Positions 12,951 to 64,000 of a DNA stretch of 64,000 bases are shown here, one piece after another. Position 1 is the first letter of the stretch. Every line of letters starts with the position of its first letter. A program made the translations under genes and the position numbers. Source of the DNA: Geosiphon pyriformis uo1 (Eukaryota; Fungi; Glomeromycota); assembly GCA_016748015.1 (NCBI GenBank), contig JAAOMT010000175.1:532212-596211 (forward strand), in the 5' to 3' direction. Under the pieces are notes generated by a model, which made no database searches, was not told where the DNA came from, and was given only the letters and a program-made list of their open reading frames with translations.

Positions 12951-12959
12951 TATGATTTA

Positions 12960-30180: not shown

Positions 30181-30184
30181 CTGT

Positions 30185-32880
30185 GCTTTTTGTGATCTAA
30201 ATTTAATTTTATCTTAGTTATTTTTAATTAATAATAATATACTAAAGACTTAGTATTTAGAATACTATTGGTTATTATAAAACATAATATATTTTTTATA
30301 TAATTGAATATTTTATTTGTTTTAATTATTAAATTTGAATTTTTTTTAAAAGATAAGTATGACTAAAAGTTAAATAGTAGAATTAATTTAATTTTTATAA
30401 TTGAATTAAGTTAATTCTATAATATATTTAATATATTTAATTTTTTTTATTTAACAAATATTTTTTATGTTTTATTAATTAGAATTATTATTAATTTATA
30501 GATTATTTTGGTATTATATAAATAGTAATAAAGTTTATTAAAAATACTATTATAAGTTACTATAAAAAAAGTTTTTTGTTTTACTTTTTTAAAAATAAAA
30601 AAAGTATATTAACAGATCTAATCACAATCTTTTATTTATAATAATATTAATTCAGTTGTATTTTTTTAATAATAGTTTTCTACATGTAAAACAAAATATA
30701 TTTTTTATTTTTTATTTTACTTGAAACTGCCAAATTATTTTCTGTAACAAATTTTATAATATAAATAAATATAAGTTTTATATTCTTTTTTTGATAATAT
30801 ATAGACTCTTATATATAAAAGTTTTTTATTATAATTTTTGCATTTAAGTAAAATATAAGCTAGTTGTTTTCTTAGCAGTAGTTTTAAATATAAAACATAC
30901 TAATTGTTGGTTTGTTTATTATTTAATATTAATAAAGTTTATTAATAAAAATTTTCAGATTATAAAAATATTAATTGTGATTTAAGTTGTTTGAATAATT
31001 GTTGTTTTGTTTTTTAGTCTAATTAGACCAAAAATTAAATATTATGTAAGTTTTGATAATTGGTTTTTCTTTTTTTTTCGAATTCAAAAATTAGAGCTTT
31101 TTTAAATTATTTATTAAAAATATTATAAATAGCAAGTACATTGGTATATTGTTTTTAATATAAAATTTTTAGTTTTTGTATTTTTTATTTTAAATTAATC
31201 TTGGTCTTAAAAAGTCAATTGTTTTTAACAAAAACTTAATATTAGAGTAGATTTATAATAAAAATTTTAATTAGAATAGTAATTTTATCAATTATAAAAA
31301 AAAAATTGTTAATTTTTTTATTGATGTCATTTTTATATTATTAATAGTAATAATTATTATTTAAGCAAATCAGTTTATATTTTATTTTAGTTTTTGTATT
31401 AACTAATAAGTAATAATGCTTTTAGCAAATCTACTATTTAGAATCAAGCTAATTAATTTTCTTTTAATTTTAATATATATAGCTGTAATTGTTTTTTGTT
31501 CAAAAATTGTTGTATTATTAAGTAAAAATAATGATTTATTTGCTTTGAATTTAAATAAAAAGATATTAAATAAGTTGGTATTTTCAGTTATTTTTGCTAG
31601 TAAAATTGTTATATTGCTAAAAAATTTTTTTTGTTAAGTTATAATTCTATTTTTTACAAATATAGTATAATAAAAATTCTGGTTTTTAAGCATTGTGAAA
31701 TAATTGGGTTGAGTATAAAAATGTTTAAGTAGTTGTTAATTGTTATTATAAAATACTAATTAGTTATTATAATTGATTTTGTTGTTGTTAGACTAAAAAC
31801 AATTTGGTAATATAAATTAGTTAAATTAATAATACTGTTATTTTTGTGATAGAACAGATTAATAATAATTGGGTTGTAGTCTTAATAAATAATAAGTAGA
31901 TGGTAGTGAATTGTATAATTGCTATTGTTAAATAAAATAACATTAATTATTCTGTTTTTGTTGATTTTTTTATATCTTTTAGCAATTATGTTTTCAATGT
32001 TTAGAGATTTCACAATAGTGGCAATTCGAATTTTGGTTTTGATTATTATTTAATAATAATGTATTGCGAGAGTTTTATTGTTGTAGTGACTAATACTTTT
32101 GTTGTTAATTAGCAAAATAAGTTTTAACTTTTTTAGTAAGTTGGTCAATTTTCTTTTCAGCTGTTAAGCTAGTTTCTCCAATGACTAGATTAACAAATTT
32201 GGTTTGGTTTACTTTTTTTATAATCAGCTCATAATTTTTTACATGTAAATAACAATAGTTAAATCTGCTAAAGCATGTAAATAAACTTTTTTAATAAGTT
32301 TGTCTTTAAGTTCAGCAATAAATTGATTTAAGATTTGAGCATTAAAATAATAAGCATTGGTTTCTAGTTGGTAAATTCTTCTGAAAAGTTTGTAGAATTT
32401 CCCAATATAAGTTATAACAAATTTAGATGGTTCTTGTTTAATATTTTAGAAACAGTTATGAAAAGTAATTGAAGTATTGTAGTATGTAAATTGCTTAATA
32501 AAAGCAGTTTTGAAAGCTTATCAATTTGCAAAAGATTCTTCCAAGTTTTTGAACTATTTACTTGTGGTTCTTTTATGAAAGTAAAGAATTGTTTTTAATA
32601 TTCTTATGGCATTTTATTTATTTATATTTTCTGCTTTAGTAACTTGATCAAGCCACTCTTAAGAACTGGTTTTTATATTTTTTTCAAAGAAATCAGAGAT
32701 TTTTGTAATATAAGCAATGGCTATTTCTTTATTGTTTTTTTTTATTGTCTGTGATTGCTTTTTTATTTTCTTTATTTTTATTTTCTACTTTTTCGATAAG
32801 TTCAGAGACATTTTTCTTATTGATTAGTGTTTTTTAAAACTTCTTAAATATTGTTACTAAAATTAAAGATATTAATTTAA
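30185..32880 (-). mobile_element. Outer (older) Gypsy of the same family: gag, protease and pre-dUTPase region, decayed
   Basis: Colinear paralog of ~18970-21700; gag EWLDQVTKA...AFKTAFIKQF; protease LILNSRFAKSII. No LTR recognised. Confidence 0.8.
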
Positions 32881-47684: not shown

Positions 47685-49129
47685 GGATTGAGAAAAATGG
47701 TTGTTAAATTCGTAAAAAATAAATAAATAAATAAATAAATAATCTAACATAGAAACAAAAAATTACGAAAGAAAACCTGTTGATAATCCACTCGTTTGAA
47801 GTGATAAAGGACGACTTGAATAGATTGCTTCGGAATGAATTGGTTCAGAAATGAATGATTCGTCGATTTCACAAATATCTTCTACATGGTTTTCTGCTTC
47901 TAAAAACTGTGCAACTTCGGGTGTAGACTCATTATACTCAAGGGCATTCATTAATCTTATAAGCGTAAACTCTGCTTCCTTAGCGGTAGGTCGATTTGAT
48001 GGGTTGGGGTCCCAACATTTTTTAATTAGTTCAGCATAGCAAGATGGAATTGTATTAGGAATCTGAGGTCTGACACAATTCAAAATATCCATTATGAGAC
48101 TGATGTTATGAGGACGATTATGAAAGGGAGGCTTTAACGTTGCCAGTTCCCACAATAACATGCCAAAACTGTAAATATCACCGGCTGTCGAGTACTCTTC
48201 ACCTCGAAAAACTTCTGATGGAATGTATGGAACCACTCCAAATATTTTTTTTTCAGCCAACTTTTTATTTGCAGGTTGACATAATCCAAGGTCACAAATT
48301 ATTGCGCTGCCAGGATAATATTGTAAAATATTGCCCGAGTGAAGGTCACGATGAACCATACCCGATTCATGAATTTCAACTAATCCCTCGGCAATACTTT
48401 GGGCTATTTTTAATTTAACATGCCAATTAGTAGAATTTGTCGACAAAAATTTCCTCATATCTCCGTATTCGGCAAAGCAGGTTACGAAACCGAAATCAAG
48501 GGTTTTTGGATTTTGAGTGATGCCAATTACTTGAGAAATCTTATCAATGTATCTATTGGAACTCACTATAGATCTTTCAATATTTATCTATTATAATGGG
48601 GAAAATTAATTAAAAATTGAGCGGTTTGAATAGTATTAAATTTTATCGATAACTGAGTAAAATAGAAATATTTGATTGCCTCTTTAAAGATCTCTTCACT
48701 CAATTCTGGATTATTCATGAATTTTATAGCCACATCTTGGGGTCCGCATCTCTTATGATCTAATTCACCATGGTGTTTTATACTATAGGCATTAAGCTTT
48801 CCATCAATCCAGGTTGCTTTATGAATTGTACCAAATCCTCCCTTTGCAATAAAAGAAATATTCTTGAAGCGGTCATAAGGAATCCATTCATAATAAAAAA
48901 ATTTCGCAGAATCATTTTCATTCATGGGTGGTATATAGATTGGATTTTTGACGATATCGTCAACAGTTGCGTTTCCGCTCGAGAAATCTTTATGAAGCTT
49001 TTCAAAAAATAAGAAACGACATGTTTCACACACATTTTTTCCATTATTTCGGGCACTTAATTTGCACTTTGGACATTCGTTGCAATCATGATGATCGGGT
49101 CGAATTCTATTAATTTGAGGTTGTTCCAT
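47520..49129 (-). CDS. TKL-like protein kinase with Cys-rich N-terminus; 3' micro-exons uncertain (unspliced stop at 47763)
   Basis: EWIPYDRFKNISFIAKGGFGTIHKATWIDG, VAIK, VHRDLHSGNIL, DLG, DIYSFGMLLWE, CWDPNPSNRP; probable GC-AG intron ~48588-48679. Confidence 0.85.
47643..47684. repeat. (AAT)n microsatellite
   Basis: Directly visible. Confidence 0.9.
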
Positions 49130-50465
49130 TGGTTCAATTGAGAATATGAATAATTATGAATAATAGGCTAATTTTACGGGTCTTTGTCAATAAATTTGTT
49201 TTTGAACCGCTAATAATGTGCGTTTAAACTTGGGGATCTTTTATATATTGTTTTTATTCTGTATCCGCTAAACCAATTTTGTTTAATAGACATTCTAGCT
49301 TCACATTTAGTTTTTTTCTTGAAGATTAATTTGAAACGGCTGAAAACTTTTTTCTGCATCAAAAATGTATATAGAATTTTCTATAGAAGTTCTTTGTTCC
49401 AAAGATAATCTAACCTAGTCAAATTAAAAACATCCTATTCTTAAGCTTTTGATTGTGATCAAAGATGGTGTAATAGCATTCAAAACTGCAAGCGACTGAA
49501 ATAAGGAAAGAAAAACGCCATAGTACATATTGTACAATAAGAAATCAAATCAAAATTTTTTCATTAAATGTAGTTTATTGTTTTTCTTGATGCAACATTG
49601 AATCGAGAAAAAACCTATATTTTCTCAAGTTTTTAAAATGTCGAGTAATGCGTGTTTTGAAATTCTTTTTAAGTGAAAGATATCTTGTGAATTTGAAATA
49701 AAAAAATATAAGCAATTAAAAATTTTGAAAAAGTTTTATCAATGAGATATCTATCAAAAAAAAAAACTTTGTGTCATGTGATGATTAAGAATAATCAAAT
49801 AAATTATATCTCCAAAAAGTTTTTTCTATCCAATTTTATTAATAATGAAAAAATGCATATTATTTTTAACCTTTACTTTATTAATAAAGAAATTACAGAT
49901 CCAAGTTATTAAGAAAAATAGATATTTTGAGGGATTAAAAATTCAAACTTGAATTGAACTCTTTACAAAAATGTTATGAACTATATAAATCCAATATTTA
50001 ACTCTGATTAAAAAATTACAATGGGATTTATGCATCCAAAACAATGTATATAATGAATTCTAGTCAAGTTTCAAATTTTTGTAATGGCATCCATCATCCA
50101 TCCATCCATAGATATCATAATCTAAAAAAAAGTTTTAAATTCGAATGATAGGTTTGTTATTGACAAAATATTGAAACTATCATAAATTGAAAAATAACAG
50201 ATAAGAATTAATCACTTATCAGTTATCATTTATTTTGATTTATTTCGTATTAGGATCAAAATATAAATGATCATTGATTGATTAATTTTTTTGAGGAAAA
50301 AAAAATATTCTCTCGTTTTTGTTTAAAGAGGTTAGCTAATAGACTAGCTAAAAAAAGTCATAGACTTTTGAACCACTTGACGAAAGAAAATTTTATAAAC
50401 ATAATATATATATATATATATAATCTTTATAGAAAATAGTGATAAAAAAATTATTTAGGACAAAA

Positions 50466-51892
50466 ATGTATTCCCAATTAATCTTGACTATTTTTATTTT
50501 CTTGGGATTTGTTCAAGTGGTTCGATGTCAAAATAAAGATAACAGCACTGATAAATTTGACAAGTTTGTAGTTTTTGGTGACTCTTGGTCTGGTAAGTCT
50601 GTTTTCATATCTATGAAAAGTTGATTCAAAAGTTCTTCGAAAAAGATTTATATAATCATATTTTTCATTCCTTCATAAATTTTTATTTTAGATAATGGAA
50701 ATACATTTCGTTTGACAGGTGGGAACTTTCCATCACCTACAGAATTTTATTATAGTGGTCGATATTCAGATGGCCCTTTATGGTCCGAATTCTTATCAAA
50801 TGTGCTGGGTACCACATTTTTTGATTTTGCATATGCTGGGGCTTCGACAGAGTAGGTGATAATTAAAAATTTGTAGTCAATTTTGTAATGGTGAATTGAT
50901 TCAGACAATGAAAAATTGAAAATTTGAAAATTTTGTAATTCTTCTAATTTTATTTTATAGCAATAATCAAATTCAAGGTAAATTTAGTCAAACATGTGTT
51001 GTTAAATATATAAATTTTTTTTGGTTCTAAATTCCAAGATTTAAATCTTAAAAGCTAAAACATATTTTATTTCTAATCAAAGGATACGTACCAGGAGGTG
51101 GTCTAGAAAATAATGTTCCATTAATTTCTGTTCCAGGATTGATTCAACAAATTGAAAAGTTTAATGAATTTCAGGCGAGTAAAAATGGGACATTGGATTT
51201 AAGTCGTACTTTGGTTTCGGTAAGTTATTTTTCGATAAAGTTTTTGAATATATAAATTGATAAAATCAAGAATAAAATTTTTAAAATAAACCTACGAATT
51301 AATTTTTTATTAGACCTGGCTTAAGGGAAAACAATATTTTACATTTTCTTACACCAACAGTAGTACTGGTATCACCGTTGCCACCCCTCCTGAATTAGTT
51401 ATTCAATCTTTTCTAGAAGCTTGGAAAAAGCTTTATTCATTCGGTATTCGATTTTTCTTGGTTTTAACCCTTCCTTCTATCACCTCTTTTCCATTCTATT
51501 CCAAACTTCCTTCTTCTCTCTCAAGTTTACTTCAAAATATAACCCAACAACATAACGCTCTTTTAAGTAGCGCGATCGTCAATTTTCAAACAACATATCA
51601 AGGGGTGAAATTTTTCTTTTTTGACTTTGAAAAGTTTAAAATGCAATACGTAGAAAATAGACGAGGTTTCAATAACTTGTTTGATGAAATCGGGGTTTGT
51701 GTTAGAGAGGTTACGAAATATGATACCGAAGAAGTTGAAGGGGAAATAAGGGAAAAACAAGGGGTTGAAAAATGTGGAGATGAAGGACAAGTTTTTTGGT
51801 ATGATTTATGGAATTTTGGACGAGATATTCATAAAGCTTTAGCTGAAAGAATTGGAGGGACGTTCAAAGGAGGCTGGAGGGAACAGTTATGA
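50466..51892 (+). CDS. Secreted GDSL/SGNH-fold protein 1 (catalytic His and block-III Asn absent), 5 exons
   Basis: Signal-like MYSQLILTIFIFLGFVQVVRC; VFGDSWS|DNGN; GRYSDGPLW; FAYAGAS; 17-nt micro-exon 50961-50977. Block III reads WLKGKQY; block V reads WYDLWN instead of WDxxH. Confidence 0.85.
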
Positions 51893-52500
51893 ACGAGATG
51901 TTTGTATTCAAAGGAGAGAGTGATAATTAATAATTTATTCGGGAAAATGAGATTTGAAATCTTGAAAATTTAAAAGAGTTGAAAGTTTAATAAGAATTTT
52001 AACCGTTTTCCCTATATCTATATATATATCTATATATGGTAACTAAAATATTTTCAAAGAGTTTTTTACCGTTACGAATTTAATAAAAGAATATAAAGTA
52101 AATTTTTTAAAATGTGTATTCTATAATCTAAAAAATCATTAAAAAATTCAAAAAGAAAAAAAAATGAGAATTTATATCTGAGGAATATATTCAATAGACA
52201 ATAAAGTTTCATGGTATTTCAATTTTAAATAGAATACGTTTTCTTTATCGAACTTGGTGAAAGTGGGGATAAATTTAAATGACAAATCAGAAAAAGAAAA
52301 TTTATTATTAAAACAATTTTCAACTTTTTCGAAGATGAAACGTAAAATATTTTGAGAATTTGAAAAGTCAAAGATTAATACTTAAAAAAATTAGTAAAAA
52401 AAAAAAATTCTTTGTAAAAAAAAAAAAAAAAAAAATGAAATCCAATTATTAAATCTGCTGAAATTGATACAATATACATGTGACATGTAAATTTAAAAAT

Positions 52501-54105
52501 TCAGACGCTTGGAATCTTGTCCAATTCTTTACAATGACCCATTGTTGTCCCAAAATATGGACCAACGTGTGATTTGTTTTCATTATCAATAGAATGATCA
52601 CCGATTCCAGAATTACACTCCTAATAAATTAAATTATTTCAATTTTCAATTTCAATTTAAAGTAACACATCACATCAAAGATCTTACGGTACCGGGTGTT
52701 CGCCACTAGTTAACCCTTTCCATGGTCTATAACCAGCACATTCCCAAAGTGCTAATCCATTAGTTGTTTCATCAACCGGTAGATCACAATTACAATCCGG
52801 CTCAGCTAGCCAATATTCTAATTCATGATGGCGATATTCCTCGGGAGAATTATATAATCTTGGAATGAAATCATTAGTATGTGTCACACGAAAGACGCTA
52901 ATTAGTTGATTGGTTAAAGCGGCAAATGAAGGAGGTCCAATCCTTGGTTGTCCAAATGTGGTAACATGAATTTTTAGTCCCTGTGGTGGCCATTGGTTGA
53001 CATTTCCACGAAGATCAATTTCAAGTGCTAAGGCTGTTAATACTGCGTATGCTATAAAATTTCAGAATTGCGCGATTCCGATTAAAAGTGGAATATTTTA
53101 ATAATATATAGTAAAGAAATATTTACCCCCACCGATACCATGGCCGGTAAAAAATATTTTAGGATTTTTCCATTCACCCAGTACACCTGTTTTATTTAAG
53201 AGGCCTTTCATCAATTCCAAAAACTCTGGAATAAAAATTCCAACGGTAATCTGCAATTCATCGTCAACAAACGTATCGGTCGGTTGAGGAAATGGACTAT
53301 GATATGGTGCAAGTCTTTGCTGTCGTCTTTTCCATCTTTTAAAAGACATTAGTTTATTCTTGAAAAATCCAACAATACTTTTAGTATCATGATCTATATA
53401 TATATTCACTAAATCTGAATAAGAGAAAAAAAAGAAAAAGAAATTTGAATTTGAATTTGAATTTTTTGGAAGTTTTTTTTTAGTGTAATTTTCAAATTTA
53501 AAAGATTTAACTATTAAAAATAAACTTAAAAAACCTCGCCGATCTTTAGGGTCCTCTCCGAATCCTTTTGGAGGTCTAGTTTTAAAAGGACAATAACCAA
53601 AATTAGCAAAAACTGCTAAATGGCTCAAAAACTTGATTGTCCTTTCATCGGTTATTCGATGTCGTTTATAATAGGAAGGAATTTTTTCACGTTTTTCGTT
53701 TTTATTTTTCGATTGAAGATTTGGTGGTGAGTAATAATGATTGAATTTATCAAGATTTTTAGGGAATGAAAACGAAGGTTCTTGATTAAACTTTTCAAGC
53801 TCCAATTTCACGGAACCATCCAAAAGTGATTCAAGTGGAATCAAATGATCAGGAATACGGTAAAGTGTCTTATTATTTAAATTTTTTTGATATTTGGAGG
53901 AGTAAGAGGAGGAGGAGGAGGAGGAGGAGGAGGAGGAGGAGGAGGAGGAGTAGTTGTAGTAGTAGTTGTAAGAGGAGGTTAATATGATTGAAGTGATTTT
54001 AGATAAATAAATGATTGAAAGGAACAGAAAAATGATAAAGAAATATTTCAAATTATTCAGTCGTTTGAATGAGTTTACAATAAACCATTTATTTATTTCG
54101 TACAT
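52501..54105 (-). CDS. Class-3 lipase-fold protein A with N-terminal TM segment; nucleophile Ser replaced by Gly
   Basis: FTGHGIGG|AYAVLTAL, VTTFGQPRIG, FRVTHTNDFIP, YRHHELEYW, HVGPYFG; poly-Ser stalk. Confidence 0.85.
53906..53950. repeat. (GGA)n coding microsatellite (poly-Ser in lipase A)
   Basis: Directly visible. Confidence 0.9.
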
Positions 54106-55072
54106 TTTTTTTTCTAGAAAAAGAGGAAAAATATTTCCTTAAAACATATTTTCTCATTTAATGGTTTTTTTATTTTTTTTTGGATTTAGTACCAAAATAT
54201 TTTTTTACTTAAAAAAAAGATCTTCTTCTCCTACTCGTCCATTTATGATCCTCCTCCATTTCCCGATATGTAAATTCTAGTAAAAATTTTTTTTTTTTTT
54301 TTTTCGCAAAAATGTTCGGAGACAATACAAATGTTAATTATTTTTATGACTAAATTAGGGGGAAAATCTATCAAATTATTAATATGTTTAAAAATATATA
54401 TATATAAATGTGTGTAAAAGTAATTTTCTAAAATTGGAATTGAGAAAAATAATTTGTCAATTTTTTGAGTGTAAATTTGTTTTTTGCTAAATATGCGTTA
54501 AAATTTTTACTTTTAATTATAATTAATTATAATGGTAATTTTTTGAATAAATAAATAAATAAATAAAATAATAAAAATTATATATAGAGAAAAATTAAAA
54601 TGAAAAATAAAAATTTTATACTACAAGTCAGAAACAGTATCCCAATTAATAAATTGTATGAATTTAATTACTTTTTCTAAAAATTCATCTCTTTTAGAAA
54701 TTATGTATGGTTAAAATTTTAGACGACGATAATAAACTTTATGAAACGTGATAAACTCAAGAGTATAAGAAAATTTTTTTTTAACCTTTAAATGATAAAA
54801 TCATCTTTTATTTGAAAATACGAATATTTCATTATTTAAATTAATGTCTTATCAAGTAGTCAATAATCATTTAATGACTGTAAAACATATTCATTAATAT
54901 TTTATTTCTTTAAAAAGGTAAAATACCAGAAAAAAATGATAATTAAATTATTTGCAAAAAAAAATCCAAAAAAGTATTTTTAACATTTTTCTTTTTGAAA
55001 TTTCGCAATACGCTAATCATTTTTAATATATAATGATTAAATGGGTCGTCATTATTTCAAGCTAATCCGTAT

Positions 55073-56919
55073 TTATATTGGACACACACCCATTACGTAT
55101 CCAAAATATGGACCTTTATGAGTCTCGATCGGATCTATTGATCGTTTCAAACCGTAGTGGTTTATGCAATGCTGATATACAAAAAAAGTTGAAGATTAAA
55201 GTTTGGTTATTAATAATATTTTTTTGGTGGGATTTTAACTCTTAATTTCTGCAACTCAAGTAGAAAATTATTAAAAATTTACCGGATTCTCAAGCTCATA
55301 TCCGTGAGGTAATACATCGGTTCTTTTTCCAAAGCATTCGTACACAATCCATGAATTTGAATTTTTTTCCACACACTCACAATCCTTTTCATTTGATATC
55401 CAAATTTCTCTTTGTGAATGCAAGTAACCAACATCTGTATGCGGGTATCGCGGGATATCGTCATCCTGATATGTGACACGATAAACTAAAGGAAAATTCG
55501 GAGTCCAGATTCGATTAATGTATTCCACTTGTGGTGCTGCCGCAAACCGGGGTTGACCGAACGTTACGATTTGAACATTTGAAGATGGATTTAAGCGTTT
55601 CCACATTAGCCCTGTTAGAACTGCGTACACTGTAGGGTATCAAAAAGAGGGGAAAAATCTGAATACGAAAAAATTTATCAAAAAAACCACAATCAGAAAC
55701 TTTTTTTCAATCACAGCAACATACCACCACCAGAGCCCCATCCAGTAATTCTTAATTTGTATTGTGTAACCCACATGTTATCCACAAGGTCCTCAATCAC
55801 TTTGATTAAATTTTTTTTAGCCTTTCTGAAATTTATTTGAAATACTTCATCAATGCCATCTGAATCTGGGCCGTAATATTTTTTATTTCCGATTTCCTCG
55901 TCGGTGTTGTTGATGATATTATTCTTACGATTTTCCCATTGTTTAATTGATAATTCTGTCCCACGAACGTATATTATTATTTCTTTAGGGTTTGAGTTCG
56001 GTTTCGTTATGCCCTCCGCTGCAGGATGAATGAATGGATGAATGGATGGATGGATGAATGGATGGATGGATGAATGGATGAATGGATGAATGGATGAATG
56101 GATGAATGGATGAATGGATGAATGGATGAATGGAAATGAAGAAAATAAGAGGGAGGCAATAAAGTTCAATCCTTCGTGTTGATATTTATTGATTAATTTT
56201 GAAAATTAAAAATTATACTGAAAAGCGAGAACAAATATGAAATAGGTAACCGGTAGTATACAAGTTTTTCTAACCTAATAAACAGCACTAAAATTATCGT
56301 TGACTGACTTATCTCTTTCTAAAAAAACAAAACACTCACCATAAATTCCTTCCCACATTCTACCACCCATCCCTCCACCGCTAAGCCAATTCATACAAGA
56401 ACTTTTTTGAGCATACTGGGCCATCTCTTTAATAAAATCCAAAAATTTCGGATCGTTTATCCTGTTTTTTTCAAAATTATTGTCATTAGTACTATAATGT
56501 CCATGATCAAATACGTTACTACTGATTACAATTTGTTTTTGACTTTTCAAATTTATTTCATTTGAAGAGATTTGTGGGATATTTGAACGAGGTTTATGAG
56601 TAAAGATCGAATTGAAATGATTTGATTGGTGGGTTGTGTTTAAAGTGAATGGTGGTGGTGGAAAGTTAATTGGTGAAGTGATTGATTTCAAACCAAAAGT
56701 GAGTTCGGAATCTTGATTTGATTTATCATTAATATCATTATTATTTAGTTGAAAATTTTCGTTATAATTGTAATTTTTTACAAAAGGTTTCGGTTTAGCC
56801 TCAACGAGAAATAATAAATAGTAAAAAATAAATAAAATTCCTAGAAATATCTTCATTTCTCTTCTATTATCAAATTTCCAAAAATTTTGTGAAAATATTT
56901 TTATTTCTTTTTGAATCAT
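55073..56919 (-). CDS. Class-3 lipase-fold protein B, signal peptide/anchor (alternative start 56856); elbow GWGSGG
   Basis: IIIYVRGT, ITGWGSGG|VYAVLTGL, VTFGQPRF, YRVTYQDDDIP, YLHSQREIW, HKGPYFG. Confidence 0.85.
56024..56133. repeat. (TGGA/TGAA)n compound microsatellite in lipase B intron
   Basis: Directly visible; abuts the minus-strand 3' splice site at ~56020. Confidence 0.9.
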
Positions 56920-57710
56920 TTACGTCAACGAATTTTTCAAAAAAGATTGGTAAGAATCGAAATCAGATGTCAATCAAAAAGTGTATTAAATATGTGTGTG
57001 TGTACATTTACTTGTTTATATTTTTTTTTCATTCCTTTATAATAATATGGAAATCAGAGGTCATCTAACGATCACTAGAGCTTTTTAATAATTTTTGAGA
57101 TGAAATTTTTTTCAAAATATTTAGCATTTAATCCAAATGTTACTTATTTCTTCTTATTTTAGATGGGTATCAATATTGGGGGAACCCTTTTTTTTTTGTT
57201 AAATATCTTTAAAGTTTGAAACATTTTCAAAGTAGAGTAGCAGTAACATGATTTGAGAATAATTAAAAAAATTTAAATTCGTGAATATTAAAATTCAGTT
57301 ACGATAGGAGCCGAGATAACTCGTTTTAATATTTTTTTGAAAGATTTTTCAAAAAATAAATAAATCACATGTTATATATATATAGAAAAGATCCTGCTTT
57401 AAATAGAAATTTTCAATTTGTAATTCTTTTAAATAATAGAACATAATACATTAAAATTATCACTAATCAAACTCTTTAATTTTAGATCAGATCTCAAGAT
57501 AACTAGACTTTTAAGCCTTTATTTGGGAATTAATTTCTTTTTTTCAAAGCGAAAAAATTATTGTTATTCTAAAAAGAAGAAGCTTTATCTTTAATAATTG
57601 TTAACTTTATTCAGGATAGTCCCAATCTATTTTCTAATTATTCAACTATATATTTTTATTGGTACTCATTATTAGGAAGTTCTTTTAGTTATTATTTTAC
57701 CACCATCATT

Positions 57711-57765
57711 ACCAACACCAACACCAACACCAACACCAACACCAACACCAACACCAACACCAACC
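57711..57765. repeat. (ACCAAC)n hexamer repeat
   Basis: Directly visible. Confidence 0.9.
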
Positions 57766-58267
57766 ACCACCACCACTACCACATTCATCCAAATAATAAA
57801 CTTGTCAATGAATTAACTTTGAAATGGCTAAGCTTTGTAACATCTTCAAATATGGATGGTTTACGAACATTTCCTTTCTCGGCTAAAGACTATTTTATCC
57901 GTAGTACTGATTGTCTCAACAAACGGAAGATGTTTGTCATATTTGAACGAATTTATTCAGGGCGAATGCTACCAGAAATTCCAAAAACTACTCATCATAC
58001 TGTTTGTAATACTGATCGAAGATTCGAAATTGAGGGGCATCAGTTTTGATAGATTAAATTGAGAATAGGCTAATAGTAACTGATAACAATGATGAATAAT
58101 GATGGCTAAAAAAAAAATAACTGCCACGCTAATTTAAAAAAAAAGTTTCAGTTGAAAAAAGTTTTTTAAAACCCAATTTTATTCTTACATTCCCAAAGAT
58201 TGAAACATCCTATTTTTTTTATATTTTTTTTTTTTTTTGATAATAAAAAAATTTAAAAGTTAACAAT

Positions 58268-59554
58268 ATGTTTTGTAAATTTTGGGTCTGCTTCGTTTTC
58301 ATATGTTTACCTTGTACTATCACCTGCCTGACCATTAACGTAAAACGTGATTTAAACCCAAAAACAAAATATAATAAATTGATTGTATTTGGAGACATTT
58401 ATTCCGGTAGATTTGAAATGGAAAGAATGAAAAATCTTTTATCGTCTTATATTATTTCTCAAAAATTAATCTTTATTAGATAATGGAAATACATTTAAAT
58501 TATCTGGTGGAAAATACCCGAATCCACCCTCACGTTACTATAAAGGCCGATACACTAATGGTCTTTTATGGCCAGACTACATACAGAAAATTTTGGATAT
58601 TGAGTTATTAAATTTCTCATATGGTGGTGCCACGGCAGAGTATGTATCTTTTCAATATTTAAAGTTTTCAATTGGATTTTTGAATTCAGTGAAAATTAAA
58701 AAAATTTTCAAATATTTTTATTCAAAGCAATGATTATTTTCAAGGTAAATTGATTGATTGATTTTTTTTTTTAAAAAAAAAAACTTTTGGTCTTTGAAAA
58801 ATTTTATTTATTGCCATTTTCTATTTTAAAAAATTTCATCTAAAGGAAAAGCAGGACATTATTTAATACCCGACTTTCCGGTTCCTGGATTCATACAACA
58901 AGTAAAAACTTTTAATGAAACTTATTCAGAAATTACTGATTTCAGCAAATCTTTAGCAGTGGTAAGTGAAAAATATTTAGTTTTCATATCATTTGAACGA
59001 ATCAAAAAATTTTTTTTGTTCAGAAATTTTTTATAATCTTTTTAAATAAATTGAAATTCCGAATATTTAACTAGACTTTTTTAACGGGAGCTGATTACGC
59101 CTACAATTTCAACAACCCTGATCCTAAATCTATCATCTCGGTCTTCCCGGAAGCTTGGAAAATTCTCTATAATAGAGGGATCACTTCTTTTCTCGTACCT
59201 TTACTACCCCGAATCTGGGAAGCACCATTCTTTGGTTCTTTAGACCCTATCGCTCGAGGAAATTTGATCGAGAAAGCTAATACACATAACCAACTTCTTC
59301 AGGATGCTATTGAAAATTTCAAAAAGAGCAATCAAGATGTTGACATGAAGCTTTTTGATACGCCAAATTTTCTCGATAAAAATAATTTTCCTGCAATTTT
59401 AAATTTCACCAATCCTTGTATAAATTATGAAATTGTACCACCAGTTGTATGTCAGGAGCCTACAGATTATTTCTATTATGATTTATACTGTTTATCTAAC
59501 AAAGTTCACTCAGATTTGGGCTGGGAAATTGCAGGTAGAATTGGGGAGTTATAA
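58268..59554 (+). CDS. Secreted GDSL/SGNH-fold protein 2 (Ser, Asn and His catalytic residues absent), 5 exons
   Basis: Signal-like N-terminus; VFGDIYS|DNGN; GRYTNGLLW; FSYGGAT; 17-nt micro-exon 58728-58744; TGADY; YYDLYC. Same intron positions as GDSL 1. Confidence 0.85.
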
Positions 59555-59557
59555 TTA

Positions 59558-59563
59558 TAGTAA

Positions 59564-59596
<33 letters not shown>

Positions 59597-59707
59597 CAGT
59601 TATAGTAGTTATATTAGTTATAGTAGTTATAGTAGTTATAGTAGTTAGAGTAGTTATAGTAGTTAGAGTAGTTGTAGTAGTAGTTATAGTAGTAGTAGTA
59701 GTAGTAG
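59558..59707. repeat. (AGT)n-based compound microsatellite just after the GDSL 2 stop
   Basis: Directly visible. Confidence 0.9.
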
Positions 59708-60070
59708 AATCTTGTAAAGAAAATCTTTTTTTAAAAAGATTTTCTTGAACTGTTTATTTTTATTTTTTTTAGATTTGATTTGTATTTTAAATTTTTGTTT
59801 TTTAGAAGCTGTTTACTTGAAAACTCTATCATTTCATGAACATCATTATTTTTTAAGAAAGAAAACAAAATAAATTATATATTAAAAACAATCCAAATAT
59901 TTTGATGTAAAGCGTATTGGGATGTAGTGGTAGTTATAGTTACGAAAGCAATCAAATATTTTTTACCGATGCAACATGCTCTTCTCTCTTTTTAGTTACA
60001 TTAATTATCTTTATGAAACGATTACAAAATCAAAAACAAAAATTTATAACAAACATTCCATCGAATTTTA

Positions 60071-60110
60071 TCCTAATATATCCTAATATATCCTAATATA
60101 TCCTAATATA
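60071..60110. repeat. (TCCTAATATA)4 tandem repeat
   Basis: Directly visible. Confidence 0.9.
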
Positions 60111-60456
60111 TATATAAATTTAGTTTATTTTAGCTTTAATAGTAAATTTAAGAATGGATATTTTTGCAAAAAAATATCCATTTTTATTATATTTCTTGAA
60201 ATCGTATAAATGAGTAATAAATTTCAGTTATTCATTTATTCATTTGGTTGTTTATTTATTTATATATAATGAGTAAGTGAAAAAAAAATTTCAAAAATTT
60301 CAAACTAAATATAAATTTAAAGGTTTGACAAAAAAATCATTTTTCAAATTATTATATATATATTTTCTAAATTGAAGGAGTTTCTTTTTTTTTGAAAGTT
60401 AATTTTTTTTTTCTTGTTCGATTTTGCAAAAATTTTTTCTAGATATATATTAAAAT

Positions 60457-62107
60457 TTATTGATTCGAACTTTTTAACATAAAATTTCGATTGGGAGGAT
60501 CAGAATGTTGACAAACTCCCATTTTGTATTGAAAATATGGACCATCGTGAGAAAAAATCCCGGATAAGTATCTTGTTTCATGAAATTGAGCATTGCAATC
60601 CTATTTTGGAATTTAAGGATGTAGATTTTAAAAAGAAAATAAAAAGTATAATTTTAAACCGAAATTTTAATAATTCTTTACCGGATGTTCATCACCAGTC
60701 TCCACATTACATTCCCATACAATTTCAGGGGGCTTACTACAATCACATGGGCTCTCTGGAATCCAGTACTCTGTTCCTGAATGGGCAAAACGTACACCTG
60801 ACACCTGATTTGGATACGATGGGATAACATCATCACTATTCGTGACTCGGTTGACCGTGAATTTTTGATTAATATACCGAGCCAATTTAATATCTCCCAA
60901 TCTTGGGGAGCCAAATGTTGTTACAATGACTCGTCGTGTTGAGAATATCTTTTGAAAAGATAATGCCGCTAAAAGTGCCCAAACTGAATCAATTAGATTC
61001 AGTCAGTAAAATACGTACGGTGAGGAAAAGAGATTAGACTAAAGGTAGAAATTTTAATACTGGGTTTATTCTAAAAAAAACTTGTGGGAAATACAAGATC
61101 TTAATATCAATAAAACTCACCACCACCTTCACCATGTCCAGTAAAGTGGAAAGGATAGGCTCGATAAGTTGAATTTCTTATGAACCGGTCAAAAACTTTA
61201 ATCAATTGATCCTCTGCACTTGTATACTCTTGTCCTGTTGTAATCAAATTTTTCCAAACATCAAAACCATTCGGGTCATTTTTCTCAAAATTGTTCGTTG
61301 TAAATTTGGTATAAAACCCTTTTTCGATTAATGGAGGTACATTCATTTCCGGTACTGGATATTGTTGGAATGTATTTTTCTGTTTAAGCAAATTGAGCTG
61401 GGTTAAGTCTTGACCTTTAAAAAAAAAGATAATTTTTCCTTCGATTTCCGTTGAAGGTGATTGTACGCGTGAATCAGCTAATTCAAGAATTTAGGAGCAA
61501 AAAGTTTTTCAATGCTTGAAATCTTTATTTTCTCAATATTTTTTTAAAATACAAGATGTGATTAAGTTCAAATTTTCTTACCATAAATTCCATCTCCAAT
61601 TTTTCCATTCTCATTATTTAGACAGTATGCTTCTTGTGAATAATAAGCCATTTCTAATAGTAATCTTAGTATTCTTGACGAGCTAATAGGTTTTTTCGTC
61701 ATACCAGATGTATTATCTAATTGGTTTCTTTTTACTATTCGCGTCGTCCTTTTAAAATTTAAAGAAGGATCTTTTAATTTATTTTTCCTTCGCATTTCTC
61801 GATAGAAACTATTTTTGAAATTTGATAAATGTGTTTTTGTATCATTTTTAGCGAAAGAGTAATTTTTAGGAAAATTACGTCCAATTCTAAAATTTTCATC
61901 AAGATTTGATGATGATGATGATGATGATGTTGTTGTTGTTATTGTTGTTGATTTTGATGTTGATATTGATGTAGAAAGTATCTTTGGAAATGTGTCCATT
62001 GACCATTTCTCGGCAGTGTATATAAAAATCTTGAAGAGTGTATAAAAAGATAAAACAAATATTATCCAAAAAACCTTTGAAGAGAGGAAATTTAGTTTTT
62101 GTTGCAT
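60457..62107 (-). CDS. Class-3 lipase-fold protein C with N-terminal TM segment; nucleophile Ser replaced by Gly
   Basis: MAYYSQEAYC, FTGHGEGG|VWALLAAL, VTTFGSPRLG, NRVTNSDDVIP, FAHSGTEYW, HDGPYF; Ser/Thr-rich stalk. Confidence 0.85.
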
Positions 62108-62623
62108 TGGTTCAAAAATTTATTAAAATTTATTTCATTGCTTTTAAGGAATTAAATCAAGGTTGAAAAATTTTCTAATAAAACCACAGGCACAACCATA
62201 GAGTTAATAAAGTTTTTCGATAAGCAAATTGTTTTTATGAAGTCATTGTAACAAAAAATCAATATTAGCAATCATAAAATCAAAACAAATTTATTTTCTT
62301 TAGAATATGGGTTTTTTTTTTACTTTTGAGGAAATGAAAATGAATCATCTAGATTGTGAAGGAAGGTTACCCGGCAATTAAGTTTTGAAAGGAATTTTAG
62401 TTGAATAGGAATAATTTTTAACATATAATTCATTTTTGAATAAAAAATAAATCCGTTTTTCCTACTCAAAAACTTTCCCAGATTGCTGATTTTCATGATA
62501 AATATTTTCAATTTGTTTCTTAAACTTTTATCATCGGGGTTTTAACCCCCGAAAATAACTAAAATAACTCCATTTTGTTGACCGAGATCTCGCGAAATGT
62601 TATTAATTTCATTGTCATCATTG

Positions 62624-62625
<2 letters not shown>

Positions 62626-62663
<38 letters not shown>
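62626..62663. repeat. (CAT)n microsatellite
   Basis: Directly visible. Confidence 0.9.
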
Positions 62664-63401
62664 TTACCGATGATCAATAGTATGATAAAATTGAAACTGT
62701 TTGTGAGGAGCCTCCTACATCTTTTGAATACGGTAATTTCTTTACTAGATTATTTTATTTTCTTCGATTTAGATATAAGGGAGCAAGGAATAGACTAATC
62801 GAGTTGAGTTCGAGTTAAAAACTTGATGATTTTTAACAAATAAAAATCAAGAATAAAGTTGACATAATAAATTTTATCATTTTTATAAAATAAATTCAGG
62901 GTTAGAAATATTTCATACAAAAAGATAATCAATTGATTTGAAGTAGAATCAATTAAAATATAAACCTATTGTTATTCAATATTTTTAATTTAGACTATCG
63001 AATGACAAAATTTAATTGATGTAAAATTCAAAATCTTTTTTTATCATAAAGTTTATTTTCATTTATAATAGATTCAGTAAGTTTTTACAAGTTTTATTTC
63101 GATCTCAAAATTCGAAATATTTCCTTTCAAGATTCATTTGAATAATTCATTTCTTGAATATTTGACCTGATGAGTTATTAAGTATACATAAATCAGTTAA
63201 AACATTTTTAATCAAATAAATAAATAAGTTAACAAAGAACCTTTTTCAGGTTTTAAACATTAATGGATTTTTTTGGAATACAAAAATTTTCAACATAATC
63301 TCTTTTCCAATGATTTTTTTTTCATTTAATTCATTGTAACAAATGAATGTTTTTGGCTTTTTCTTCTCAATAAATTTTAAAATGAAGTCCAGTTATAGTA
63401 T

Positions 63402-63612
63402 TCAATTAAGTTCAGGGGAAATAGGCCATGTTTTACTTGATGATCCTTCATAGGGACATCTGCCCATGATGTAACCAAAATAGGGACCATAATGTGAAAA
63501 CCTTCCTTGTAAGTTTCTCGTCTCATGAAACTGTGCATTGCATTCCTATTATAATTAATATTTCAAGAAAAAAATCAAAAAAATTTTTGAGCTCAATAGT
63601 TTAAACTCTTTT

Positions 63613-63653
<41 letters not shown>

Positions 63654-63988
63654 AACTAATATTATTTTCTTGTGTTCAATTCTACTCACTGGATTTTCTT
63701 GGCCAGACTCGGAATAACATTCAAATGCCACTACCCGAAATTTACATTCACACTCATCTAAGGGAATCCAATATTCTTCACGATGATGTCGATATTTCTC
63801 TCCACGATACTCTTTCGGGAATGAAGGAATAGTATCGTCAGCATGGGTAACTCTGTATGAAATCAACCATTCATCAACAAATCGAGCAAACTGGTAATTG
63901 CCAATACGTGGCTGACCAAAAGTTATCACTTCCACATTTATATGAGGGTATTTCCTTTTGAAAGAAATAGCAGTGAGGAGGGCCCAAA
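63402..63988 (-). CDS. Class-3 lipase-fold protein D, 3' part (5' end outside the window)
   Basis: WALLTAISF, VITFGQPRIG, YRVTHADDTIP, YRHHREEYW, CNAQFHETR..HYGPYFG; (CAT)n in last intron. Confidence 0.85.
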
Positions 63989-64000
63989 CTTTTTAAAATA

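What the first reader, a model, noticed from the sequence alone, without database searches (positions are those of the whole stretch)
50466..64000. Cluster of apparently catalytically dead secreted/surface lipase-fold proteins from two unrelated folds
Seen: six consecutive genes (2 SGNH/GDSL, 4 class-3 lipases). The five complete ones have N-terminal hydrophobic segments and shared intron positions, and I saw no disabling stops, yet all five visible active sites lack catalytic residues. Known: class-3 lipases need the GxSxG Ser, SGNH hydrolases need Ser/Gly/Asn/His, and alpha/beta-hydrolase folds are used non-catalytically elsewhere (GID1, neuroligins, EDS1 family). Inference: parallel loss in two unrelated folds at one locus suggests a co-selected lipid-binding, sensing or decoy system at the cell surface. 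That could matter for a symbiotic fungus if the Glomeromycota assignment holds, since AM fungi are fatty-acid auxotrophs.
Basis: partly seen in the sequence, partly recalled or inferred. Interest (0 to 1): 0.88.

Follow-up and report, generated by a model that had tools for sequence, protein, structure and literature searches.

The report
Serine-less lipase and GDSL gene cluster
This stretch of the Geosiphon pyriformis genome holds four intact lipase-shaped genes that lack only the catalytic serine and two GDSL-type genes that lack their catalytic histidine. The lipase-like genes belong to a genome-wide family of about 300 such genes that this scan has already met elsewhere, and nothing tested here shows that the two kinds work together.

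Summary
Window 50466-64000 carries six consecutive, intact, intron-bearing genes: two GDSL/SGNH-like (+ strand) and four class-3-lipase-like (- strand, the last cut by the window end).

- **Lipase-like genes.** g3, g4 and g5 have Gly where the nucleophile Ser should be (GHGIGG, GWGSGG, GHGEGG). All four, g6 included, keep the triad Asp and His.
- **GDSL genes.** GDSL#1 keeps Ser but has Asn->Lys and His->Asn. GDSL#2 has Ser->Ile, Asn->Ala and His->Cys.
- **RNA.** Spliced RNA contigs confirm the g4 model, Gly elbow included, and the first GDSL#1 intron.
- **Organism.** It is Geosiphon pyriformis, a Nostoc-hosting glomeromycete.

The loss is not local. The genome has 298 GHGxGG sites against 48 GHSxGG sites. 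The window's lipase-like genes fall in separate old subclades of one large Gly clade. The Gly elbow is the most conserved block of the family, and pN is below pS throughout.

The scan has already reported this family on other DNA of this genome. A dead GDSL copy also sits in a GDSL cluster with no lipase hit listed on its contig. GDSL genes lie near lipase-like genes somewhat more often than chance would give, but this is not decisive.

Best reading: secreted or membrane-anchored proteins that bind a ligand without cutting it. A linked two-fold system is unproven.

The parts
50466..51892 (+). GDSL#1: four-exon SGNH/GDSL-like gene with a signal-peptide-like N-terminus (MYSQLILTIFIFLGFVQVVRC). 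Block I is GDSWS|DNGN (Ser kept), block II AYAGAS, block III GKQY (Asn->Lys), block V YDLWN (His->Asn).
   Evidence: An RNA contig splices 50591->50691 (GT..AG) and joins GDSWS to DNGN. A second RNA contig covers 51357-51627. Exon 4 starts at 51314 after an AG. hhalign to the paralogue profile gives 98.9%, E 2.8e-17.
52501..54105 (-). g3: class-3-lipase-like gene. It has an N-terminal hydrophobic segment followed by a Ser-rich run. Elbow TGHGIGG at 53128-53148, Asp in RVTHTNDFIP (52852-52890), His in KSHVGPYFG (52549-52575).
   Evidence: The donor GGG G|GTAAAT follows the elbow. No piece of g3 matched Pfam. The Asp-bearing exon's best paralogues elsewhere are 49-52% identical. It falls in the GHGIG subclade. 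The one RNA run laid had no contig on it.
55073..56919 (-). g4: class-3-lipase-like gene, transcribed. Exons run ...-56340, 56018-55725, 55629-55283 and 55171-55073, with the 3' UTR reaching at least 54992. The mature elbow is TGWGSGG-V-YAVLTG. Asp lies in RVTYQDDDIP and His in ETHKGPYFG in the last exon.
   Evidence: A 1044-nt spliced RNA contig, with GT..AG introns at 56019-56339, 55630-55724 and 55172-55282. Pfam Lipase_3 scores 26.5 bits on exon 55283-55629. Nearest relative is P0001 at 51% identity, in a starred branch.
58268..59554 (+). GDSL#2: four-exon SGNH/GDSL-like gene with a signal-peptide-like N-terminus. Block I is GDIYS|DNGN (Ser->Ile), block II SYGGAT, block III GADY (Asn->Ala), block V YDLYC (His->Cys). 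It is transcribed divergently from g4, with 1.35 kb between the two starts.
   Evidence: hhalign to the paralogue profile gives 99.5%, E 1.3e-22. Its intron positions match those of GDSL#1.
60457..62107 (-). g5: class-3-lipase-like gene. It has an N-terminal hydrophobic segment followed by a Thr/Ser-rich run. Elbow TGHGEGG at 61122-61142, Asp in RVTNSDDVIP, His in FSHDGPYF (60532-60555).
   Evidence: The NCBI model P0113 (247 aa, partial) is 96-100% identical over its three exon pieces, 61651-61580, 61478-61122 and 60987-60670, and reads GHGEGGV. The GHGEGG pattern hit at C777:593331-593350 equals window 61120-61139.
63402..64000 (-). g6: 3' part of a class-3-lipase-like gene, cut by the window end. 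Asp lies in RVTHADDTIP (63816-63854) and His in FSHYGPYFG (63474-63500). The elbow is outside the window.
   Evidence: Pfam Lipase_3 scores 39 bits. It groups with g5 on a branch with 80% support, inside the starred GHGEG subclade. The complete lists of GHSxGG pattern hits contain nothing on contig C777.

Best explanation
The four lipase-like genes are ordinary members of the giant Geosiphon pyriformis family of class-3-lipase homologues. An ancestor of that family swapped the nucleophile Ser for Gly, probably by one AGY->GGY transition, and the family then expanded to about 300 copies.

Shown:
- The genes are intact, and g4 is spliced and transcribed.
- They keep the whole lipase scaffold: the elbow, the triad Asp and His, six conserved Cys and, in most copies, the lid Trp.
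- They evolve under purifying selection.

Inferred:
- They enter the secretory pathway through an N-terminal signal peptide or signal anchor, and many carry a Ser/Thr-rich stalk.
- They use the preserved pocket to hold an acyl or lipid-like ligand without forming the acyl-enzyme. In effect they would be natural counterparts of the inactive Ser146Ala Thermomyces lipase that was crystallised with oleic acid.
- They would therefore act as binders, sensors or traps rather than as hydrolases.

The two GDSL-like genes are divergent members of a separate family of roughly 13 genes in which catalytic residues have been lost to different depths. They keep the structural core and one is transcribed, so they are most likely non-hydrolytic secreted proteins too.

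I read the adjacency of the two kinds as two tandem-expanding secreted families sharing a neighbourhood, not as a demonstrated two-component system.
For: - **Census.** The own genome has 298 GHGxGG sites (reversed-pattern control 4) against 10+38 GHSxGG sites (control 0). The Lipase_3 search gave 783 first-look candidates.
- **Gly codons.** All four Gly codons occur at the nucleophile position.
- **RNA.** The g4 mRNA contig keeps GWGSGG-V across the confirmed intron, and GDSL#1 is spliced.
- **Independent model.** The NCBI model of g5 reads GHGEGGV.
- **Protein library.** Among the best 150 of 1.84 billion representatives there are 94 Gly-elbow domains. Asp is present in 69 of 69 and His in 57 of 64 where the motif could be found.
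- **Family alignment A1.** Among the 43 Gly-type proteins, G221, H222, G223, G225 and D281 are invariant, His355 is kept in 35 and the lid Trp in 31. The elbow block has the lowest entropy, 0.80 bits against 2-3 elsewhere. Six Cys are conserved.
- **Selection.** pN is below pS in every pair (medians 0.45 and 0.73). Rough omega is 0.14-0.29 for Gly-type pairs and 0.16-0.27 for Ser-type pairs.
- **Intactness.** 148 of the 150 best exon matches have no stop.
- **Fold.** The AF2 model of paralogue P0001 has pLDDT 79. Its best structural matches are Aspergillus niger feruloyl esterase A, Rhizomucor miehei lipase and Thermomyces lipase, with target TM-scores up to 0.79. Sequence alignment puts its Gly on Ser146 and its Asp on Asp201 of Thermomyces lipase.
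- **Tree.** g3, g4 and g5+g6 lie in different subclades of one Gly-dominated clade of 108 rows.
- **GDSL.** The scaffold residues (W, L, Y and G of WxxLYxxG, the Cys pair, the Asp of DxxH) are kept while the catalytic ones are replaced.
Against: - No binding or activity data exist, and I cannot name the ligand.
- Near-total retention of Asp and His is unusual for a dead enzyme and may mean that some chemistry remains.
- Gly at the elbow could be held by the steric needs of the strained turn rather than by function.
- RNA evidence is one small run kept as contigs, so it gives no levels.
- Secretion is inferred from reading the N-termini and from the conserved Cys, not from a predictor.
- dS is near saturation, so the omega values are rough.
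- GDSL loci lie near lipase-like genes more often than my rough background predicts, which leaves a functional link possible.
Confidence: 0.6

Rival explanations
1. The lipase-like proteins are still enzymes. The conserved His-Asp pair, with Gly opening space at the elbow, would act as a general base on water or on a substrate hydroxyl. The Gly-rich strand-turn-helix could alternatively bind an anionic head group. Either way they would be neo-functionalised rather than dead.
For: Asp is kept in 69 of 69 Gly-elbow domains and His in 57 of 64. Asp281 is invariant and His355 is kept in 35 of 43 Gly-type proteins. The elbow GHGxGG is the most conserved block. No other scaffold change separates Gly-type from Ser-type copies. 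From my own knowledge, not tested here: cofactor-free dioxygenases of the alpha/beta-hydrolase fold work through a His/Asp dyad without using the elbow Ser as a nucleophile.
Against: Nucleophile-less mutants of this very fold are used as inactive proteins, for example 1GT6, the S146A Thermomyces lipase with bound oleic acid. No new conserved nucleophile candidate appears in Gly-type copies. The position after RG, which supplies the oxyanion hole in Thermomyces lipase, is not conserved. Asp and His may be kept for structural reasons.
Confidence: 0.17
2. The GDSL-like and lipase-like genes of this locus form one co-selected system. They would be co-expressed and perhaps physically associated surface proteins.
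For: Besides this window, lipase-like hits lie about 7 kb from the GDSL genes on C602 and C412 and about 21 kb from the one on C714. That makes about 4 of 10 GDSL loci, against a hand-estimated 6-10% background. g4 and GDSL#2 are divergently transcribed with 1.35 kb between their starts. GDSL#1 and g4 both have RNA.
Against: Most of the roughly 300 lipase-like genes sit in arrays for which no GDSL neighbour was reported (notes, unchecked), and the GDSL family has only about 13 members. The GDSL copy next to lipase-like genes on C412 has a complete S-G-N-H set. A dead GDSL copy (L039) sits in the C785 GDSL cluster, where no lipase hit was listed. The window's lipase-like genes belong to different old subclades, and GDSL#1 and GDSL#2 share only 31% identity, so the locus is not a duplicated module. 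The distance threshold was chosen after looking. I could not fetch flanks to check further.
Confidence: 0.12
3. They are young pseudogenes or neutrally drifting copies with no function.
For: Catalytic residues are missing. g3 has no RNA contig in the one run laid. NCBI models in the family are often partial or fused.
Against: The exons are intact and the splice sites conserved. 148 of 150 best family matches have no stops. pN is below pS while dS is saturated, which means long survival after the loss. Motifs stay invariant across copies that are only 30-50% identical. g4 and GDSL#1 give spliced RNA.
Confidence: 0.03
4. Alternative splicing or a wrong gene model hides a normal GHSxG or DxxH.
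For: An intron sits directly after the elbow, and the gene models here were built by hand.
Against: The Gly codon lies inside the exon, upstream of the donor. The g4 RNA contig reads GWGSGG-V-YAV across the junction. The NCBI model of g5 reads GHGEGGV. The sequence after the junction (V/x-YA-x-L) continues the canonical GHSLGGALA helix with no residues missing. The GDSL block V substitutions lie deep inside the last exon.
Confidence: 0.02

Closest known systems
Fungal class 3 lipases and feruloyl esterase A (Rhizomucor miehei lipase 3TGL/4TGL, Thermomyces lanuginosus lipase 1TIB/1DT3, Aspergillus niger FaeA 1USW)
   Same: They share the Pfam family (Lipase_3) and, for the modelled paralogue P0001, the fold, with target TM-scores up to 0.79. 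Also shared are the strand-elbow-helix G-H-x-x-G-G, Asp in xxDxVP, His near the C-terminus in a YFG motif, disulfide Cys and the lid Trp.
   Different: The nucleophile Ser is Gly. The oxyanion-hole position after RG is not conserved. The proteins carry long N-terminal extensions with a hydrophobic segment and, in g3 and g5, a Ser/Thr-rich run. Copy number is about 300 in one genome.
Thermomyces lipase S146A (PDB 1GT6), an engineered inactive lipase crystallised with oleic acid
   Same: It is the same fold with a small residue at the nucleophile position and an otherwise intact pocket, and it still holds a fatty acid (title, alignment). This is the mechanistic model for binding without cutting.
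   Different: It is a laboratory mutant with Ala, not a natural gene family with Gly. No ligand is known for the Geosiphon proteins.
Plant EDS1 / PAD4 / SAG101 lipase-like domains
   Same: They are class-3-lipase-fold domains used non-catalytically, and they appear among the structural matches at lower rank, with query TM-scores of 0.33-0.41. That they signal without hydrolysis is from my own knowledge.
   Different: They are intracellular immune signalling heterodimers fused to an EP domain. EDS1 and PAD4 keep the Ser. There are a few copies per genome, and no sequence-level kinship closer than the fold.
Rozella allomycis class 3 lipase-domain protein EPZ35680.1 (P0134)
   Same: It is a natural fungal Lipase_3 protein with GHGQGGA, that is Gly at the nucleophile position, and Asp (NSNDLVP) kept.
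   Different: It lies in the canonical Ser clade of the tree, so its loss is independent. It is apparently a single gene, not an expansion.
SGNH/GDSL hydrolases (Pfam Lipase_GDSL), including the intact Geosiphon paralogues on C785, C714 and C412
   Same: Shared features are block I GDSxS-DxGN, the GR(F/Y)S(N/D)G motif, the block II Gly, the WxxLYxxG core, the Cys pair, and the same intron positions as the paralogues.
   Different: GDSL#1 lacks the block III Asn and block V His. GDSL#2 lacks the Ser, Asn and His. No window exon reaches the Pfam cut-off on its own.

Membership tests
Class 3 lipase (Pfam PF01764 Lipase_3) | Significant match to the family profile | tested here: met
   Scores against a cut-off of 22 bits: the g4 exon at 55271-55630 gives 26.5 and the g6 exon gives 39.0. 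The g5 pieces give 16.8 and 12.4, below the cut-off because they are single exons, and no piece of g3 matched. g3 and g5 join the family through their paralogues.
Class 3 lipase (Pfam PF01764 Lipase_3) | Alpha/beta-hydrolase fold of the Rhizomucor/Thermomyces type | tested here: inconclusive
   This is met for the paralogue P0001, which is 51% identical to g4 in one exon. Its AF2 model has pLDDT 79 and its best Foldseek matches are 1USW, 3TGL and 1TIB. I did not fold the window genes themselves, because I did not build joined models.
Class 3 lipase (Pfam PF01764 Lipase_3) | Nucleophile Ser in G-x-S-x-G | tested here: not met
   g3 has GHGIG, g4 GWGSG and g5 GHGEG. g4 is confirmed in RNA and g5 in the NCBI model. 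The column aligns with Ser146 of Thermomyces lipase in the paralogue. The g6 elbow is outside the window.
Class 3 lipase (Pfam PF01764 Lipase_3) | Triad Asp | tested here: met
   The motifs are THTNDFIP, YQDDDIP, NSDDVIP and HADDTIP. The column is invariant in the family and aligns with Asp201 of Thermomyces lipase.
Class 3 lipase (Pfam PF01764 Lipase_3) | Triad His near the C-terminus | tested here: met
   The motifs, all in the last exons, are KSHVGPYFG (g3), ETHKGPYFG (g4), FSHDGPYF (g5) and FSHYGPYFG (g6). I placed the His by motif analogy with DHLSYFG and AHLWYFG of the solved lipases, which I recalled from memory. The HMMER alignment stops before this region.
Geosiphon Ser-less lipase-like family (this scan's earlier reports) | G-H-G-x-G-G elbow followed by a phase-1 intron, a second intron after E(N/H)P, and a last exon with H-x-G-P-Y-F-G...C | tested here: met
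   g4 departs by having Trp for His before the Gly. All window copies fall inside the Gly-dominated clade.
SGNH/GDSL hydrolase (Pfam PF00657) | Significant match to the family profile | tested here: inconclusive
   The window exons are below the cut-off; the best is E 0.083 on GDSL#1 exon 2. Homology is shown through paralogues: hhalign gives 98.9% and 99.5% against a profile of six Geosiphon paralogues, four of which pass the Pfam cut-off.
SGNH/GDSL hydrolase (Pfam PF00657) | Block I nucleophile Ser (GDS) | tested here: inconclusive
   GDSL#1 meets it with GDSWS-DNGN, which is RNA-confirmed. GDSL#2 does not, having GDIYS.
SGNH/GDSL hydrolase (Pfam PF00657) | Block II Gly | tested here: met
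   The motifs are AYAGAS (GDSL#1) and SYGGAT (GDSL#2). I read these directly and made no profile alignment of that exon.
SGNH/GDSL hydrolase (Pfam PF00657) | Block III Asn (G-x-N-D) | tested here: not met
   GDSL#1 has GKQY and GDSL#2 has GADY, against GNDY in the intact paralogues.
SGNH/GDSL hydrolase (Pfam PF00657) | Block V D-x-x-H | tested here: not met
   GDSL#1 has D-L-W-N and GDSL#2 has D-L-Y-C, so Asp is kept and His lost, against WDxxH in the paralogues.

The most novel reading that the evidence does not exclude
The roughly 300 Geosiphon proteins may not be dead. One possibility is a new activity class of the class-3-lipase fold that works through the strictly kept His-Asp pair and an invariant Gly-rich elbow, either by general-base chemistry or by capturing an anionic head group. 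Another is a diversified surface repertoire that recognises lipids of the Nostoc partner or of other microbes, with some members, as at this locus, acting together with nucleophile- or His-less GDSL proteins.
Probability: 0.15. Interest if true: 0.85.

Novelty: new variant of a known kind. Interest (0 to 1): 0.55.

Why it matters
Non-catalytic relatives of enzymes are known. A lineage-specific expansion to about 300 copies of a lipase that lost only its nucleophile, while keeping Asp, His, the lid, the disulfides and the elbow under selection, is not described in the papers I could search.

It would be one of the largest gene families of the only fungus known to house cyanobacteria inside its cells. 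From my memory of the genome paper, which I could not read here, that fungus cannot make its own fatty acids. If the proteins bind or sense lipids, they bear directly on how such a fungus recognises or taps its partner.

For this particular finding the added value is negative but useful. The locus is an ordinary sample of that family lying beside two decayed GDSL genes, and the appealing two-folds-one-system idea has no firm support yet.

Tried and rejected
- **Word-indexed protein searches.** g3 exon 1 and the GDSL#1 last exon gave no hit at E <= 0.001. The window's own gene models seem absent, or outside the length range, in that collection.
- **GDSL flanks.** I did not try again. Co-location therefore rests on the coordinate lists, and one search's list is cut after contig C571.
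- **Gene neighbourhood of g5.** The look-up of encoding contigs on P0113 found nothing on record.
- **g6 elbow.** It is not a GHGEGG site and not in the complete GHSxGG lists. I could not read it.
- **Literature.** The Geosiphon genome paper (Curr Biol 2021) is not held. Five papers mention both Geosiphon and lipase; I read three papers, one of them among those five, and none describes this family.
- **ESM Atlas.** The look-up of P0001 returned only generic Lipase_3 clusters.
- **Joined models.** I built, searched and folded no joined (spliced) protein model of any window gene. Exons were searched one by one by reference, and a database paralogue (P0001) stood in for the fold.
- **Complex prediction.** I did not run complex prediction, because I do not claim that the proteins bind each other and only exon pieces were available.
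- **Segmental duplication.** I rejected the idea that the locus is a duplicated GDSL-plus-lipase module. g3 and g4 are in different subclades from g5 and g6, and the two GDSL genes share only 31% identity.

Full report
**What is in the sequence**

The window is AT-rich (GC about 28% in this part) and intron-rich. It equals G000:C777:532212-596211 of a 128-Mb, 792-contig assembly.

Reading the frames and the splice sites gives six consecutive genes:
- GDSL#1, 50466-51892 (+)
- g3, 52501-54105 (-)
- g4, 55073-56919 (-)
- GDSL#2, 58268-59554 (+)
- g5, 60457-62107 (-)
- g6, 63402 to beyond the window end (-)

Pfam Lipase_3 is over its cut-off on the Asp-bearing exons of g4 and g6. It is below cut-off on the shorter g5 pieces and absent for g3. 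g3's Asp-bearing exon instead finds the family's paralogues across the genome.

The GDSL exons do not reach the Pfam cut-off on their own. Their last exons do match a profile of six Geosiphon GDSL paralogues, with hhalign probabilities of 98.9% and 99.5%. Four of those six paralogues pass the Lipase_GDSL cut-off.

**RNA evidence**

One small public run holds spliced contigs on the 6-kb stretch I laid, 50400-56399.

A 1044-nt contig follows g4 through three GT..AG introns (56019-56339, 55630-55724, 55172-55282). A 151-nt contig splices GDSL#1 from 50591 to 50691. A 271-nt contig lies inside the GDSL#1 last exon.

Translating the exons separately shows that g4 exon 56018-55725 ends in ...ITGWGSGG plus one base. 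The next exon supplies the two bases that make Val and then YAVLTG. The mature elbow is therefore T-G-W-G-S-G-G-V-Y-A, with Gly at the nucleophile position of G-x-S-x-G.

It carries ETHKGPYFGYVMGVC. By analogy with DHLSYFG and AHLWYFG of the Rhizomucor and Thermomyces lipases, which I recall from memory, this is the triad His. Equivalent last exons exist in g3, g5 and g6.

No contig lay on g3. Contigs cannot show absence or expression level.

**Active sites**

The lipase-like genes lack only the Ser:

| gene | elbow | Asp motif | His motif |
|---|---|---|---|
| g3 | GHGIGG | THTNDFIP | KSHVGPYFG |
| g4 | GWGSGG | YQDDDIP | ETHKGPYFG |
| g5 | GHGEGG | NSDDVIP | FSHDGPYF |
| g6 | outside the window | HADDTIP | FSHYGPYFG |

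The NCBI model of g5 (P0113) independently reads GHGEGGV. That model is partial: it starts at an internal Met and runs into the last intron.

A phmmer alignment of the close paralogue P0001 to Thermomyces lipase puts its Gly on Ser146 and its Asp on Asp201.

For the GDSL genes, the alignment with intact paralogues gives the following:
- GDSL#1: Ser kept (GDSWS-DNGN), Asn->Lys (GKQY), His->Asn (YDLWN)
- GDSL#2: Ser->Ile (GDIYS), Asn->Ala (GADY), His->Cys (YDLYC)

Both keep the block II Gly, the WxxLYxxG core, the Cys pair and the Asp of DxxH.

All five complete genes begin with a hydrophobic segment. In the GDSL genes it is signal-peptide-like. In g3 and g5 it looks more like a signal anchor and is followed by a Ser/Thr-rich run.

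**The loss is genome-wide, not local**

The organism is Geosiphon pyriformis. Of the 30 library hits whose source I looked up, 24 are NCBI proteins of that species.

In its genome the Lipase_3 profile finds 171 matches among 783 first-look candidates. The DNA pattern for G-H-G-x-G-G plus the first intron base occurs 298 times, against 4 for the reversed control. The two Ser versions occur 10 and 38 times, against 0 for the control. All four Gly codons are used.

Among the best 150 of 1.84 billion protein representatives found with the g4 exon, I counted 94 Gly-elbow domains, 25 Ser, 7 Ala, 5 Asp and 2 Asn.

Sources of the hits I looked up:
- Of the 24 non-Ser-elbow proteins checked (19 Gly, 3 Ala or Ala/Asp, 2 Asp), 22 are Geosiphon.
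- The two exceptions are a Rozella allomycis protein (GHGQGGA) and a protein from a JGI metagenome contig (GHGSGGA). They look like independent single losses.
- Of the 6 Ser-type hits checked, 3 are Geosiphon. The others are Coemansia, Panaeolus and a fly.
- One further look-up (P0119, from ENA metagenomes) has a canonical GHSLG elbow.

A quick maximum-likelihood tree of the exon after the elbow has 131 rows, few columns and many open forks. It separates a canonical Ser clade of 23 rows from a clade of 108 rows that is 82% Gly. g4 pairs with P0001 on a starred branch. g5 and g6 group together inside a starred GHGEG subclade. g3 lies in a GHGIG group.

The window's four genes therefore inherited the Gly from old, different branches of the family.

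This scan has already reported the same family on other contigs of this genome (s1-502560, s1-502559, s1-495494, s1-499117). My counts and conclusions agree with those notes and were obtained independently.

**Are the genes maintained?**

In the 56-protein alignment A1, G221, H222, G225, R254, R275, D281, H296, E300 and E338 are invariant.

Among the 43 Gly-type proteins, the nucleophile Gly is 43 of 43, the triad His 35 of 43 and the lid Trp 31 of 43. Six Cys are conserved, which fits disulfide-bonded secreted proteins. The elbow block has the lowest entropy of the whole domain, 0.80 bits against 2-3 elsewhere. No column other than the nucleophile distinguishes Gly-type from Ser-type copies.

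Pairwise Nei-Gojobori estimates on the Asp-bearing exon give pN below pS throughout, with medians of 0.45 and 0.73. Rough omega is 0.14-0.29 for Gly-type pairs and 0.16-0.27 for Ser-type pairs. dS is close to saturation, so these are only rough figures.

Of the 150 best genome matches to g3's exon, 148 have no stop.

An AF2 model of P0001 has mean pLDDT 79 and pTM 0.76. Its best Foldseek matches are feruloyl esterase A, Rhizomucor lipase and Thermomyces lipase, with EDS1 and PAD4 further down the list.

Together with the RNA, this rules out young pseudogenes and mis-splicing.

**Is there a two-fold system?**

The GDSL family has about 13 members:
- two in this window
- seven on C785
- one each on C714 and C602
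- more distant ones on C412, C718 and C673

Their states vary:
- The copies on C714, three on C785 (at 289546, 370196 and 527708), and those on C412, C718 and C673 show a complete S-G-N-H set.
- L034 (C785 at 224930) has lost block III.
- L039 (C785 at 257803) is dead: GDI, GAD, DPIS.
- I could not read the copy on C602 or the C785 copies at 280454 and 284267.

Lipase-like hits lie about 7 kb from the GDSL genes on C602 and C412 and about 21 kb from the one on C714. None was listed on C785, although one search's list is cut before that contig.

I grouped the first 100 GHG sites by hand and got about 51 clusters per 100. From that I estimate that 6-10% of the genome lies within 21 kb of a lipase-like gene. 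Four of about ten GDSL loci would then be nominally enriched, with binomial P of roughly 0.003-0.013. The threshold was chosen after looking, and both families are tandem-expanding secreted families. The neighbour on C412 is an intact GDSL enzyme, and a dead GDSL gene exists on a contig with no lipase hit listed.

The locus is also not a duplicated module. GDSL#1 and GDSL#2 share only 31% identity, and g3, g4 and g5/g6 come from different subclades.

I could not fetch flanks to go further. I rate a functional link at about 12%.

**Mechanism**

*Shown:* these are intact, selected, partly transcribed genes with a complete lipase scaffold minus the nucleophile, and GDSL scaffolds minus the general base.

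*Inferred:* the proteins enter the secretory pathway and use the preserved pocket to hold an ester or lipid-like ligand without forming an acyl-enzyme. The engineered S146A Thermomyces lipase does exactly this with oleic acid (1GT6).

The strict retention of Asp and His is the main fact this reading does not explain. It keeps open a neo-functional catalytic or head-group-binding role, which I rate at about 17%.

**Limits**

- I built, searched and folded no joined protein model of any window gene. Exons were handled one at a time by reference, and a database paralogue stood in for the fold.
- Read laying was given 6000 letters.
- Secretion, ligand and location are untested.

Noticed in passing
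P0134 (Rozella allomycis EPZ35680.1) and P0089 (JGI metagenome 3300033572; locus L041:133-1191): Two Lipase_3 proteins outside Geosiphon also have Gly at the nucleophile position (GHGQGGA and GHGSGGA). The Rozella protein sits in the canonical Ser clade of the tree. P0089 sits on a long, unreliable branch and lacks the family's H-x-G-P-Y-F-G C-terminus. Both look like independent single losses.
   Followed up: partly
window 60670-61651 (P0113), and many library proteins of 540-1286 aa (P0002-P0005, P0008, P0009, P0014, P0060): NCBI gene models of this family are often wrong. The model of g5 lacks the N-terminal exon and the His-bearing last exon and reads into an intron. Many long models hold two lipase domains, which probably means neighbouring genes were fused. 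Family counts based on annotated proteins will therefore be off.
   Followed up: partly
window 47763-49129 (-): Two adjacent ORFs just upstream of the cluster carry a protein-kinase-like glycine loop (FIAKGGFGTIHKATW). I did not analyse them further.
   Followed up: no
window 12001-22000 and 30001-32000: These are long blocks of extreme AT content (GC 13-19%) with strong GC skew, set between genic blocks of 35-39% GC.
   Followed up: no
window 63590-63640, 53880-53960 and 59555-59650: Trinucleotide runs lie in or next to the genes. An ATG/CAT run in the last intron of g6 reads as poly-Met. A Ser-codon run lies in the N-terminal region of g3. A further Ser-like run lies just after the GDSL#2 stop.
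   Followed up: no
G000:C785:224930-527971 (loci L034-L037, L039): Seven GDSL paralogues lie spread along contig C785, with four of them clustered at 257-290 kb, and they show graded active-site states. L035, L036 and L037 are complete. L034 has lost block III. L039 has lost Ser, Asn and His (GDI, GAD, DPIS), the same Ser->Ile and Asn->Ala as GDSL#2, although the two are only 25% identical.
   Followed up: partly
own genome, GHGEGG sites: The residue after the Gly tracks the subclades. There are 30 sites with Glu (GHGEGG), g5 among them, and they form their own branch in the tree. An acidic residue next to the empty nucleophile position is unexplained.
   Followed up: partly
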